DNA of 62,935 bases, the filler included, from Reticulomyxa filosa (lineage: Eukaryota; Protista; Foraminifera), in assembly GCA_000512085.1 (NCBI GenBank). It is 21 parts of 21 records of this genome, joined end to end, with 100 filler letters (N's around TTAATTAATTAA, not from the genome) between each part and the next. Parts side by side here need not be neighbours in the genome. Positions count along the whole stretch, not along the records: positions 9,081 to 10,346 come from ASPP01002150.1; 20 more parts are not named here. One strand, written 5' to 3'. This document shows, piece after piece, positions 9,081-10,346 of the stretch. Position 1 is the first letter of the stretch; each line of letters opens with the position of its first letter. Below the pieces are notes generated by a model. That model saw only the letters and a list, made by a program, of their open reading frames with translations. It made no database searches and was not told the DNA's origin. The position numbers were made by a program, and so were the translations under genes.

Positions 9081-9223
9081 TGCAGTTTTTGCATAAAAAC
9101 TTTTGTTTACCTCTTGTTAAACCATGCCTGACATATTTTTCTGAATTACAAAACCTGCAATGCATTATCACTCCATACTAGTTGCTCCCCTAATATAACA
9201 TGTATCTAAATGTTGGCAATCCC
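9081..9223 (-). mobile_element. IS1-family-like element left end with InsA-type zinc-ribbon start (ATG at 9165); truncated by contig end
   Basis: GGAG RBS then MHCRFCNSEKYVRHGLTRG/[slip]QKFLCKNC, a C-x2-C...G...G.Q...C-x2-C ribbon typical of IS1-family transposases; candidate terminus GGGATTGCCAAC at 9223. Confidence 0.6.
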
Positions 9224-9615
9224 TTGATTTTACTGATTATTGATTATTTTATATTAATCAAATTTATTTCAATAGAGGTAGAATCAACACCATTTGTATT
9301 ATCAAATAAAAGTGAAATTGGGTTTTATTTTAAAGAATTCATCTTTTCATCTTTAATAAGCAATTTTTTCTTTATATTTGTCTTAACATTCTTTTATAAA
9401 ATGTATAAAAAATTAAAAGACGACCCACGAATCAGGGAATTAAGTTTGTGATCTAGTTATTAATATTCAGAGACGATTCATTGAACTTTATGGATTCTGT
9501 ATTTTCGGATATAGATATTAATCCATCGCCTATTTTTCCCAATTCGCTTGCTAAATATTATGAGATAGTTTTGAATTAATATCAGCGTTGAATTAATACA
9601 ATCTTTAAATTTATT

Positions 9616-9873
9616 TTGTGTGTAATTTTAAAATGCTGCTTTCTTATTTCACTAATACCAGTGAATATATCTTTCATATTTGCAGGAATAATCGGTGTGT
9701 TAGTTGATCCGAGTTTTGCTTTAATTGCTTTTTTCATTGCAATAATAACCCTTCTTCCTTTAACTAACATTTATTTTGTCAATTCATGGCTTAGCGTTTA
9801 TTGCATTATTGGTATTGATGTACTCATGTCTAGTATAAAAGAATCAAAAAAGAACAAGAAACACAGCAATTGA
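9616..9873 (+). CDS. Possible small bacterial membrane protein, convergent with the tRNA
   Basis: 85-aa hydrophobic ORF (GTG start) with a basic tail; no family recognised. Confidence 0.3.
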   Translation: MCVILKCCFLISLIPVNISFIFAGIIGVLVDPSFALIAFFIAIITLLPLTNIYFVNSWLSVYCIIGIDVLMSSIKESKKNKKHSN

Positions 9874-9884
9874 TAATTTAATAG

Positions 9885-9961
9885 TGGTGGGACCTGTAGG
9901 ACTTGAACCTACGACAACACCGTTATGAGCGGTGCGTTCTAACCAACTGAACTAAGGTCCC
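9885..9961 (-). tRNA. Bacterial tRNA with CAT anticodon, probably tRNA-Ile2 (lysidine type); CCA encoded
   Basis: GGGACCTTAGTTCAGTTGGTTAGAACGCACCGCTCATAACGGTGTTGTCGTAGGTTCAAGTCCTACAGGTCCCACCA folds as a full cloverleaf (77 nt). It lacks initiator features, and the acceptor and anticodon arms resemble bacterial Ile2. Confidence 0.92.
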
Positions 9962-10000
9962 AATATCTTTCAAAAATTTTAAGCATAGTTAGCTAGTAGT

Positions 10001-10029
10001 AGTATAGCAATAAAGTGCTCTTATGTCTA
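10001..10029 (-). promoter_or_regulatory. Sigma70-type promoter for the tRNA
   Basis: TAGACA (10029-10024), 17-bp spacer, TATACT (10006-10001) with extended -10 TGn; the -35 overlaps the fur stop codon. Confidence 0.7.
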
Positions 10030-10215
10030 TTCCTTTTTGCCTTCCGGAGGCTTTTTAGCTGTTAATGAACGCCCGTAAAGTTCCAAGCTATGATTGATCA
10101 ATTCATAACCTAGTTTTTTGGCAATTTTCTTCTTCAACTCTTCTATTTCAGGATCAAAGAATTCAATAATCTTGCCCGTATCAAGATCGATCAAATGGTG
10201 GTGGTGATGTTCATT
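10027..10215 (-). pseudogene. fur: Fur-family regulator, C-terminal half, interrupted by an IS
   Basis: NEHHHHHLIDLDTGKIIEFFDPEIEKLKKKIAKKLGYELINHSLELYGRS...* matches the Cys-less alphaproteobacterial Fur/Mur/Irr C-terminus (HxHLID..TG..IEF...IE...IA...G..L..H.LELYG). No start codon, so it is absent from the ORF track. Confidence 0.88.
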
Positions 10216-10216
10216 A

Positions 10217-10346
10217 GACTTCTTTCGAAACTAAAAGAAATAGATTAAAAAGTATTTAGTAACTAATATAGGAAGTTATGAAATACGAAGCTATCAAAGG
10301 GTTAAATTCAGACCAATTTCGCCGTTTAACCGGTGTAAAGAAAGAA
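10217..10346 (+). mobile_element. IS5-family (ISL2-like) element left end with transposase start at 10278; truncated by contig end
   Basis: TTA (10214-10216) then GACTTCTTTCGAAAC; AGGAAG RBS; MKYEAIKGLNSDQFRRLTGVKKE carries the FRRLTGV N-terminal motif of IS5/ISL2-type transposases. Confidence 0.8.

What the first reader, a model, noticed from the sequence alone, without database searches (positions are those of the whole stretch)
9081..10346. A bacterial, probably alphaproteobacterial symbiont contig inside a protist assembly
Seen: a CCA-encoding CAT tRNA, a TAGACA-N17-TATACT promoter, two RBS-preceded transposase starts, a Fur C-terminus and no introns or microsatellites. Established: Cys-less HxHLID-type Fur proteins are characteristic of alphaproteobacteria, and eukaryotic nuclear tRNA genes do not encode CCA. 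Inference: AT-rich DNA broken at IS elements on both ends looks like an IS-rich, eroding host-associated genome (Rickettsiales/Holosporales-like). The ORF track misses all three informative proteins. The window cannot distinguish symbiont, food bacterium and nuclear insertion.
Basis: partly seen in the sequence, partly recalled or inferred. Interest (0 to 1): 0.8.

Follow-up and report, generated by a model that had tools for sequence, protein, structure and literature searches.

The report
Bacterial contig: tRNA, broken fur, IS ends
This 1.27-kb piece is ordinary bacterial DNA, most likely alphaproteobacterial, holding one tRNA gene and a fur iron-regulator gene cut in half next to a mobile element; it cannot show whether the bacterium is a symbiont.

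Summary
On the minus strand at 9885-9961 lies a tRNA gene with anticodon CAT and a templated CCA. By its G3-C70 pair it is probably tRNA-Ile2 (lysidine type), not tRNA-Met. At 10027-10215 (minus) lies only the C-terminal half of a Fur regulator. Homology stops 131 bp inside the piece, so this is a truncated pseudogene, not a gene cut by the contig edge. Next to the break an IS5-type transposase begins (10278, plus). At the left edge an IS1-type zinc-ribbon transposase begins (9165, minus). About 660 bp (9220-9884, 24-30% GC) hold no detectable gene. The Fur remnant carries the Cys-free HLID motif. All 40 alphaproteobacterial Fur genes fetched had it, and none of 40 from other classes. Best identities are 71-78%, to Pelagibacterales, Rhodobacterales and unlabelled metagenome fragments, so no order can be assigned. 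Short contigs 96-98% identical occur in wastewater, activated-sludge and microbial-mat runs. Bacterial and probably alphaproteobacterial origin is supported. A Rickettsiales/Holosporales symbiont in a protist is neither supported nor excluded. The promoter motif is no better than chance. Interest is low.

The parts
9081..9165 (-). First 28 codons of an IS1-type transposase (InsA-like four-Cys zinc ribbon); the rest is cut off by the piece's left edge
   Evidence: NCBIfam IS1/IS1595 zinc domain 33.8 bits (cut-off 28), 4-Cys transposase domain 36.5 (cut-off 27), and IS1 family transposase positions 1-27. Pfam Zn_ribbon_InsA 24.9 bits, just under its 26.1 cut-off. tblastn matches IS1595 and IS1 transposases. 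The first-listed record (46.7% identity, E 0.3) is a plasmid of Ca. Bandiella woodruffii, where the matching ORF overlaps an annotated IS1 family transposase.
9166..9219 (-). Leader of the IS1-type gene: Shine-Dalgarno GGAG (9174-9171) and a promoter-like site TTGCCA-16-TATATT (9219->9192); the end of the IS was not delimited
   Evidence: Sequence read; promoter scan (count not above chance). Alignment with the Bandiella IS1 end showed no shared terminal repeat.
9220..9884 (.). AT-rich stretch (24-30% GC) with no detectable gene or known RNA
   Evidence: Composition. The ORFs of 83, 85 and 62 aa have no Pfam hit and no meaningful NCBIfam hit. The Atlas recognition score of the 83- and 85-aa ORFs is about 1480, under the 2300 that 91% of known proteins reach. 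Codon-position GC is flat. No Rfam match at E<=0.5. tblastx against 88 loci gave only low-complexity noise.
9885..9961 (-). tRNA gene, anticodon CAT, CCA templated; elongator type, probably tRNA-Ile2 (lysidine-modified CAU reading AUA)
   Evidence: ARAGORN and Rfam at 71.2 bits. The acceptor stem has G3-C70 and C5-G68; the D stem has U11-A24 and U12-A23. Silva et al. 2006 state that G3/C70 excludes Met and fMet and that A11-T24/G12-C23 mark fMet (PMC1635315). The best E. coli BLAST matches are tRNA-Ile.
10001..10029 (-). Promoter-like site TAGACA-17-TATACT with TG, placed to drive the tRNA; its first three bases are the fur stop codon
   Evidence: 10 of 12 matches, the best site in the piece, but the total count equals that of shuffles (7 against 7.2).
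10027..10215 (-). fur pseudogene remnant: 62 codons of the C-terminal dimerisation and metal-site domain plus the stop codon; the N-terminal DNA-binding domain and the start codon are missing
   Evidence: Pfam FUR E 2.9e-13, profile 75-121/121 only. NCBIfam Fur model positions 85-135/148. Alignment with full-length relatives. In-frame TAG at 10231-10233. A 98%-identical microbial-mat contig stops matching at 10215 and runs on for 45 unlike bases.
10039..10051 (+). Short GC-rich hairpin followed by a T-run on the + strand, lying inside the last codons of the fur remnant
   Evidence: Terminator scan, (1 found against 0.3 expected); function not tested.
10216..10277 (+). Probable left end and leader of the IS5-type element, with AGGAAG at 10270-10275; this is the sequence that replaces the 5' half of fur
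   Evidence: The boundary is inferred from the end of Fur homology and the divergence point of the microbial-mat contig. The terminal repeat could not be defined because the other end is outside the piece.
10278..10346 (+). First 23 codons of an IS5-family-like transposase, cut off by the piece's right edge
   Evidence: tblastn at 52-68% identity over 22-23 aa to N-termini; the annotated matches are all IS5 family transposases (E 0.1-9). The Ca. Fukatsuia IS5 transposase starts with a closely similar N-terminal sequence. No Pfam or NCBIfam hit for so short a piece.

Best explanation
The piece is a fragment of a low-GC bacterial replicon, most likely from an alphaproteobacterium. The assembler could extend it only as far as two repeated insertion sequences: an IS1-type element on the left and an IS5-type element on the right. 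Both have their 5' ends facing inward.

Between them lie three things:
- an intact, probably functional elongator tRNA gene, tRNA-Ile2 with anticodon CAU (lysidine-modified, reading AUA) and a templated CCA;
- the 3' half of a fur-family gene, whose 5' half (DNA-binding winged helix and start codon) has been replaced by the IS5-type end at about 10215/10216;
- about 660 bp of AT-rich DNA without a gene.

Shown: the features, the truncation and the alphaproteobacterial signature of the remnant.

Inferred: the remnant cannot bind DNA and so is a dead gene. The break came from IS insertion or from an IS-mediated deletion. It is probably recent, because the 62 remaining codons are open and keep all family-invariant residues. 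The tRNA is probably transcribed from the promoter-like site 40 nt upstream.

The lifestyle of the bacterium (endosymbiont, food, co-cultured or contaminant) cannot be decided from this piece.
For: Bacterial origin:
- An elongator tRNA with templated CCA. Proteobacterial tRNA genes template CCA in 96% of cases and eukaryotic genes do not (PMC5143459).
- A Fur domain.
- An IS1/IS1595 zinc domain above its cut-off and an IS5-like N-terminus.

Alphaproteobacterial affinity:
- The best GTDB matches are Roseovarius, Pelagibacteraceae and uncultured Alphaproteobacteria at 60-76%.
- The HLID motif is in 40 of 40 alphaproteobacterial sequences against 0 of 40 from other classes, which carry H[ML]VC.
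- In the tree, the labelled rows nearest by path are all alphaproteobacterial; the nearest row overall is an unlabelled contig (L084).

Truncation:
- Pfam and NCBIfam match only the last third of their Fur models.
- There is an in-frame stop upstream.
- The alignment shows nothing before the His cluster.
- A 98%-identical environmental contig diverges exactly at 10215.

No other gene was detected in 9220-9884.

It is not a phage or known plasmid. Only the tRNA matches those collections.
Against: - The class assignment rests on 62 residues of one gene, and that gene can be transferred horizontally.
Rickettsiales, Holosporales and other groups may simply not have been sampled.
- The tree on 53 columns gives no supported placement.
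- The tRNA's best DNA match among plasmids is to Bacillus (88%), ahead of an alphaproteobacterium (83%). Firmicutes also template CCA.
- The IS5 assignment rests on 23 residues with weak E-values.
- The insertion was not seen directly, because no intact allele could be fetched.
- The absence of a gene in 9220-9884 is negative evidence only.
Confidence: 0.75

Rival explanations
1. The bacterium is a host-restricted endosymbiont of the sequenced protist, in the IS-expansion and pseudogene stage of genome erosion.
For: - Two different IS ends, one truncated regulator gene and about 660 bp of gene-free AT-rich DNA lie within 1.27 kb.
- Streamlined free-living low-GC alphaproteobacteria such as SAR11 have short spacers and few IS elements (own knowledge).
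- The first-listed, weak match of the IS1-type N-terminus is a plasmid of Ca. Bandiella woodruffii, a Rickettsiales symbiont of the ciliate Euplotes, with 6 places in that record.
- Close relatives occur in wastewater, activated sludge and microbial mats, habitats rich in ciliates and amoebae.
Against: - 1.27 kb cannot measure genome-wide IS load or coding density, and IS-flanked fragments are exactly what short-read assemblers leave from any IS-bearing genome.
- No Rickettsiales or Holosporales sequence appeared among the Fur relatives.
- The Bandiella match has E 0.3.
- An elongator tRNA gene that still templates CCA is less typical of strongly reduced symbionts such as Wolbachia (PMC5143459).
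- The host assembly could not be inspected.
Confidence: 0.4
2. The bacterium is free-living: a food organism, a co-cultured associate or an environmental or reagent contaminant of the sample. It merely carries IS elements and one IS-disrupted gene.
For: - Contigs 96-98% identical are found in three unrelated environmental studies (wastewater, activated sludge, microbial mat).
- The labelled Fur relatives are free-living marine groups.
- CCA templating of an elongator tRNA is the normal proteobacterial state.
- IS-disrupted genes occur in many free-living bacteria (own knowledge).
Against: - The environmental contigs are 158-264 bases at depth 2-3, so they are rare members there and could sit inside protists.
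- The very low GC of the spacer, the long gene-free stretch and two IS ends so close together are more usual in host-restricted genomes.
Confidence: 0.35
3. The segment is bacterial DNA integrated in the protist's nuclear genome (horizontal transfer), no longer part of a living bacterium.
For: Only that the fur gene is dead and much of the piece is non-coding.
Against: - The tRNA gene is intact with perfect cloverleaf scores.
- The fur remnant and both transposase starts are open and undecayed.
- Near-identical pieces occur in metagenomes of three habitats.
- No eukaryotic sequence adjoins the piece, which ends in IS elements on both sides.
Confidence: 0.04
4. The DNA is bacterial but not alphaproteobacterial, for example from a low-GC Firmicute or another proteobacterial class that acquired an alpha-type fur gene.
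For: The tRNA's best plasmid-database match is Bacillus at 88%. Firmicutes template CCA. IS1 and IS5 families are found in all phyla.
Against: - The HLID motif and identity ranking point to Alphaproteobacteria.
- The NCBIfam Bacillus-type Fur model scores 28.8 bits against 52.1 for the proteobacterial model.
- tRNA identity over 77 bases is a poor taxonomic marker.
Confidence: 0.15

Closest known systems
Alphaproteobacterial Cys-free Fur/Mur regulators (Pfam PF01475), e.g. those of Pelagibacteraceae and Roseovarius found here
   Same: The C-terminal domain is the same: the His cluster, the HLID-x-D-T-G motif in place of the CxxC of enteric Fur, and the invariant E, F, A, G, L, H, E, L positions. 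Identity is 71-76% to GTDB genomes and 78% to metagenome fragments.
   Different: Only residues matching about the last 50 of roughly 140 are present. The winged-helix DNA-binding domain and the start codon are gone. There is a run of five His and an extra Lys/Pro-rich tail of about 10 residues. In the nearest relatives fur is followed by enolase; here it is followed by a tRNA gene. No fetched locus has a tRNA(CAT) gene within 5-10 kb of fur.
Bacterial tRNA-Ile2 (anticodon CAU, lysidine at position 34; ileX/ileY of E. coli)
   Same: It has anticodon CAT, a G1-C72 pair, G3-C70 and C5-G68 in the acceptor stem, A37 and A38, the T-loop shared with E. coli ileX and ileT, and a templated CCA.
   Different: It has A4-U69 instead of the C4-G69 that E. 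coli TilS requires. Overall identity to ileX (56/77) is only slightly above that to metT (53/77). Lysidine modification cannot be tested here.
IS1 family insertion sequences (InsA zinc ribbon followed by InsB), e.g. the copies on the Ca. Bandiella woodruffii plasmid NZ_CP110821.1
   Same: The N-terminal C-x2-C ... C-x2-C zinc ribbon scores above the NCBIfam domain cut-off, and the start is preceded by a Shine-Dalgarno sequence.
   Different: Only 28 residues are in the piece. Identity to the Bandiella copy is 47%. IS1595 family transposases match about as well. No terminal repeat was identified.
IS5 family insertion sequences with an N-terminal helix-turn-helix, e.g. the IS5 family transposase of Ca. 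Fukatsuia symbiotica plasmid NZ_CP021662.1
   Same: 15 of the first 22 residues are identical (68%), and the gene starts about 60 nt from the presumed element end.
   Different: Only 23 residues are available. The E-values are weak (0.1 and above). The catalytic DDE domain and the terminal repeats are outside the piece.
IS-expansion stage of recently host-restricted bacteria
   Same: Locally, two IS ends, a regulator pseudogene and a long AT-rich gene-free stretch are packed together.
   Different: Genome-wide IS load, pseudogene fraction and host location are unknown, so membership cannot be claimed from 1.27 kb.

Membership tests
Fur family (PF01475) | Sequence match above the curated Pfam cut-off | tested here: met
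   50.5 bits against a cut-off of 23.1, E 2.9e-13
Fur family (PF01475) | N-terminal winged-helix DNA-binding domain | tested here: not met
   The match covers profile positions 75-121/121 only. There is an in-frame stop at 10231-10233 and nothing alignable upstream. It is therefore a remnant, not a working member.
Fur family (PF01475) | C-terminal dimerisation domain with the His/Glu metal ligands | tested here: met
   All 16 invariant columns of the alignment with 13 relatives are kept, including the His cluster.
Alphaproteobacterial Cys-free Fur subtype | HLID in place of the first Cys of the CxxC motif | tested here: met
   HLIDLDTG is present. The motif was in 40/40 alphaproteobacterial and 0/40 other-class sequences fetched. 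The sample is biased by the way it was collected.
tRNA-Ile2 (CAU, lysidine) | Cloverleaf with anticodon CAT | tested here: met
   ARAGORN and Rfam at 71.2 bits
tRNA-Ile2 (CAU, lysidine) | G3 or A3 / C70 or T70, stated to exclude tRNA-Met and tRNA-fMet | tested here: met
   G3-C70 is read from the alignment; the rule is from PMC1635315.
tRNA-Ile2 (CAU, lysidine) | C34 converted to lysidine by TilS and charged by IleRS | not testable with these tools
   Needs RNA modification analysis, or at least a tilS gene in the same genome.
Initiator tRNA-fMet | C1xA72 mismatch, A11-U24, and the G29-G31/C39-C41 stack | tested here: not met
   It has G1-C72, U11-A24 and an anticodon stem CACCG/CGGUG.
IS1 family | N-terminal four-Cys zinc-binding domain of InsA | tested here: met
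   NF050000 scores 33.8 bits against 28. Pfam Zn_ribbon_InsA scores 24.9 against 26.1, just under.
IS1 family | InsB catalytic domain and terminal inverted repeats | not testable with these tools
   The gene runs off the piece after 28 codons, and no repeat was recognised.
IS5 family | Transposase similarity | tested here: inconclusive
   23 residues, 52-68% identical to N-termini; the annotated matches are IS5 family transposases, E 0.1-9. No profile hit.
IS5 family | DDE domain, terminal repeats, target duplication | not testable with these tools
   These lie outside the piece.
Sigma-70 promoter | -35 and -10 hexamers with 16-18 nt spacing, more frequent or better than chance | tested here: inconclusive
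   The hexamers are present (10/12, with TG) and well placed for the tRNA, but the count of 7 equals the shuffle mean of 7.2.
Host-restricted endosymbiont genome | Genome-wide IS and pseudogene load, reduced gene set, location in host cells | not testable with these tools
   Only 1.27 kb is available.

The most novel reading that the evidence does not exclude
The piece comes from an undescribed low-GC alphaproteobacterial lineage that lives in protists and is in the early, IS-driven phase of genome erosion. It has just lost Fur-type metal regulation, and close relatives (96-98% DNA identity) are spread through wastewater, activated sludge and microbial mats.
Probability: 0.3. Interest if true: 0.4.

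Novelty: new member of a known kind. Interest (0 to 1): 0.2.

Why it matters
For the assembly it is a housekeeping result. This contig should be flagged as bacterial and kept out of the eukaryote's gene set. Contigs sharing its coverage, composition and IS ends could be binned to recover the bacterium. If that bin proved to be an IS-laden symbiont, the fur truncation would be one dated example of regulator loss early in host restriction. By itself the piece shows only well-known things: a tRNA gene, an IS-disrupted gene, and contig breaks at repeats. A small practical point is that the tRNA is labelled Met by anticodon alone but is probably tRNA-Ile2.

Tried and rejected
- Two exact-pattern scans of JGI metagenome contigs were both blank. 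One used 14 fur codons with free wobble positions, the other the whole 77-nt tRNA.
- Exact look-ups of the 83-aa and 62-aa ORFs in public assemblies found nothing on record.
- The search for sequencing runs did not find the source run. The best holders share 6% of the words.
- Cluster look-ups of 20 Fur relatives gave almost no names and no taxonomy.
- A profile search with full-length Fur relatives returned 8000 unnamed proteins, mostly of 135-140 aa, with no taxonomic labels.
- fur-tRNA synteny was looked for in 57 loci. None has a tRNA(CAT) near fur.
- A maximum-likelihood tree of the Fur C-terminal domain (53 columns) was unresolved for the piece.
- Alignment of the IS1-type end with the Bandiella IS1 end showed no shared terminal repeat. 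The repeat search inside the piece found only chance-level pairs.
- tblastx of the gene-free stretch against all fetched loci gave low-complexity noise only. Atlas feature searches of its two longest ORFs gave no usable hit.
- Phage and plasmid collections match only the tRNA. Phage and known-plasmid origin is therefore rejected. Organelle origin is also rejected, because Fur and transposases do not occur in organelle genomes (own knowledge).
- Identity to E. coli ileX against metT alone (56 against 53 of 77) did not settle the tRNA type. The published G3-C70 rule did.
- A literature search for Fur in Rickettsiales or Holosporales symbionts found nothing relevant.
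Full report
**What is in the piece**

The 1266 bases (9081-10346) have 30% GC. Composition ranges from 24% in the middle to 41% over the tRNA. Four things can be recognised.

**tRNA gene**

- ARAGORN finds a tRNA with anticodon CAT at 9885-9961 on the minus strand. Rfam's tRNA model scores it 71.2 bits, E 2.8e-15, full length.
- The gene ends in CCA, so the 3' end is templated.
- ARAGORN names it tRNA-Met from the anticodon alone. 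It is not an initiator: it has G1-C72, U11-A24 and U12-A23, and an anticodon stem without the G/C stack.
- Silva et al. 2006 (PMC1635315) classified more than 1000 bacterial CAT tRNA genes. They state that G3, A3, C70 or T70 exclude both Met and fMet, and that C5-G68 is frequent in tRNA-Ile(CAT).
- This gene has G3-C70 and C5-G68. BLAST against 5,426 E. coli genomes puts tRNA-Ile genes first.
- Plain identity to E. coli ileX (56/77) against metT (53/77) is not decisive on its own.
- I therefore read it as tRNA-Ile2, the lysidine-modified tRNA that reads AUA. An AT-rich genome needs that tRNA heavily. The modification itself cannot be tested here.
- Rfam's sub-threshold match to the plastid ycf2 leader on the opposite strand (32.9 bits against a cut-off of 65.7) is probably the antisense of plastid trnI-CAU. 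That explanation rests on my knowledge of plastid gene order, not on a test.
- Ardell and Hou 2016 (PMC5143459) report these rates of CCA templating:
  - Proteobacteria template CCA in 96% of tRNA genes.
  - Bacteroidetes mostly do not.
  - Cyanobacteria and Actinobacteria do so mainly in initiators.
  - Strongly reduced symbionts such as Wolbachia and Buchnera keep it mainly in initiators.
- An elongator gene with CCA therefore fits a proteobacterium (or a Firmicute) that is not extremely reduced. It excludes a eukaryotic nuclear tRNA gene.

**fur remnant**

- The minus-strand frame from 10215 down to the stop at 10027-10029 encodes 62 residues.
- They match Pfam FUR at E 2.9e-13, but only profile positions 75-121 of 121. 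They match NCBIfam's Fur model at positions 85-135 of 148.
- Alignment with 13 relatives shows that all 16 invariant columns of the C-terminal domain are kept. Nothing before the His cluster is alignable.
- Upstream in the same frame there is a TAG at 10231-10233.
- The gene therefore ends inside the piece, 131 bases from its right edge. It has lost the winged-helix DNA-binding domain and its start codon.
- Independent support for the break point comes from a 264-base contig in a microbial-mat run. It is 98% identical over 10003-10215 and then runs on for 45 bases that do not match what lies right of 10215 here. The orientation was checked against the loose-end table of the same call.
- The transposase-like ORF starts 62 bases to the right of the break. 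The simplest reading is that an IS5-type element, or a deletion it mediated, removed the 5' half of fur.
- The remnant is open and undecayed, so the event is probably recent. Both of these points are inferences.

**Two IS starts**

- At the left edge the minus strand has GGAG, five bases, then an ATG at 9165 and 28 codons of a four-Cys zinc ribbon.
- This ribbon passes the NCBIfam cut-offs for the IS1/IS1595 zinc domain (33.8 against 28) and for a 4-Cys transposase domain (36.5 against 27). It aligns to the start of the IS1 family transposase model. Pfam's InsA ribbon is just under its cut-off (24.9 against 26.1).
- tblastn against plasmids finds IS1595 and IS1 transposases. The first-listed record, though weak (47% identity, E 0.3), is a plasmid of Ca. 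Bandiella woodruffii, a Rickettsiales symbiont of the ciliate Euplotes. There the matching ORF overlaps an annotated IS1 family transposase and occurs six times.
- At the right edge, AGGAAG precedes an ATG at 10278 and 23 codons. These resemble the N-termini of annotated IS5 family transposases (52-68% identity, E 0.1-9). The Ca. Fukatsuia copy starts with a closely similar sequence.
- Both genes point outward and run off the piece. This is what a short-read assembler leaves when a unique segment lies between repeated elements.

**The rest of the piece**

- From about 9220 to 9884 nothing is recognisable.
- The ORFs of 83, 85 and 62 aa have no Pfam hit and no meaningful NCBIfam hit. The 83- and 85-aa ORFs score about 1480 on the Atlas recognition measure, where 91% of known proteins reach 2300. 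All three have flat codon-position GC.
- There is no Rfam family in this stretch at E<=0.5 and no tandem repeat of note.
- The TAGACA-17-TATACT motif is real and sits 40 nt upstream of the tRNA. However, the piece has as many promoter-like sites as its shuffles (7 against 7.2), so it is a plausible promoter, not a demonstrated one.
- A short hairpin with a T-run on the plus strand lies inside the last fur codons. Its role is unknown.

**Whose DNA is it?**

- A scan of one genome per GTDB species with the Fur remnant returned 301 relatives. The best 80 are led by Roseovarius, Pelagibacteraceae and uncultured marine Alphaproteobacteria at 60-76% identity. Pseudomonas, Stutzerimonas and betaproteobacteria follow at 40-61%.
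- The tabulated motif shows HLID in all 40 alphaproteobacterial sequences. All 40 gamma, beta and epsilon sequences have H[ML]VC or a variant.
- The sample is biased. It was seeded with 8-residue words from the query and cut at 600 rows, so groups such as Rickettsiales or Holosporales may simply be missing.
- An exhaustive profile-free search of 1.84 billion representatives found 1441 relatives, none above 69% identity.
- The word-indexed search of 5.8 billion clusters found two fragments at 78%. Their contigs (36-38% GC, 0.5-1.1 kb) carry fur followed by enolase, not a tRNA.
- A maximum-likelihood tree on the 53 usable columns puts the piece on a long branch. Its nearest labelled rows are alphaproteobacterial, but there is no supported placement.
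- The tRNA gives no help. Its best plasmid-database match is Bacillus at 88%, and an alphaproteobacterium follows at 83%.
- I conclude that alphaproteobacterial origin is probable (about three in four) and that the order is unknown.

**Where else is it found?**

- Laying the three best runs shows short contigs of close relatives:
  - 158 bases (wastewater) and 171 bases (activated sludge), both about 96% identical. Between them they span 9846-10037, covering the tRNA and both of its non-coding flanks.
  - 264 bases at 98% over the fur remnant, from a microbial mat.
- Identity of that order in non-coding flanks means the same species or genus. All three are at depth 2-3, so these are rare members of their communities.
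- These habitats are full of ciliates and amoebae. The result therefore fits a protist associate and a free-living bacterium alike.
- Two exact-pattern scans of JGI metagenome contigs were blank.

**Verdict on the interpretation**

- Bacterial: yes. Alphaproteobacterial: probably. Contig broken at IS elements: yes. Local signs of erosion: yes.
- The piece is too short to speak for a genome, and nothing here points specifically to Rickettsiales or Holosporales.
- Symbiont, food bacterium or contaminant cannot be told apart. I give them roughly 0.4 and 0.35, with nuclear insertion at about 0.04. The last is low because the tRNA, the remnant and both transposase starts are undecayed, and near-identical DNA occurs in unrelated metagenomes.

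**Novelty and interest**

All the parts are of well-known kinds, so interest is low. The organism seems undescribed in the collections I could search, which makes this a new member of a known kind. Its practical value is to flag the contig as bacterial and to seed a binning effort.

**Rules and limits**

Noticed in passing
window 9885-9961 (-): ARAGORN labels the CAT tRNA as Met. By the published G3-C70 discriminator, and by its best E. coli matches, it is more likely tRNA-Ile2 (lysidine). Annotation by anticodon alone would mislabel it.
   Followed up: yes
window 9887-9961 (+): There is a sub-threshold Rfam match (32.9 bits, cut-off 65.7) to the plastid ycf2 5' UTR family on the strand opposite the tRNA. 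It is probably the antisense of plastid trnI-CAU, which lies next to ycf2, and not a real element here.
   Followed up: partly
L081:447-773, L082:3-368, L083:1-294: The closest Fur relatives (78%, ENA metagenome contigs, fur followed by enolase) look damaged too. L081 lacks about 30 residues of the recognition-helix region compared with L082, and L082 has an in-frame stop. L083 starts with what looks like a Nextera adapter sequence. Coverage, where the record names give it (L082, L083), is 2-4x, so sequencing or assembly errors are as likely as real decay.
   Followed up: partly
window 10039-10051 (+): A GC-rich 5-bp hairpin with a T-run on the plus strand lies inside the last codons of the fur remnant. 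On the fur strand it is followed by an A-run, so it would terminate only transcription coming from the tRNA side.
   Followed up: no
window 9846-10037 and 10003-10215: Short contigs 96-98% identical, including non-coding flanks, occur in wastewater, activated-sludge and microbial-mat runs from three studies. A 49-base wastewater contig also matches 10232-10267 (the IS5-type leader) at 86%.
   Followed up: partly
L089 (Ca. Bandiella woodruffii plasmid NZ_CP110821.1, 4038-7127): This ciliate-symbiont plasmid carries a degraded IS5 family gene with several internal stops. Directly beside it is an IS1 element whose InsA-like ORF is the first-listed, weak match to the piece's left-edge fragment. 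The IS1 N-terminus occurs at six places in the plasmid.
   Followed up: partly
L084 (Logan contig of SRR14234068, 29.7 kb, 34.5% GC): This unlabelled low-GC contig has an intact 142-aa HLID-type Fur, 65% identical to the remnant. It is the nearest row to the piece by path length in the tree. Its organism was not identified.
   Followed up: no
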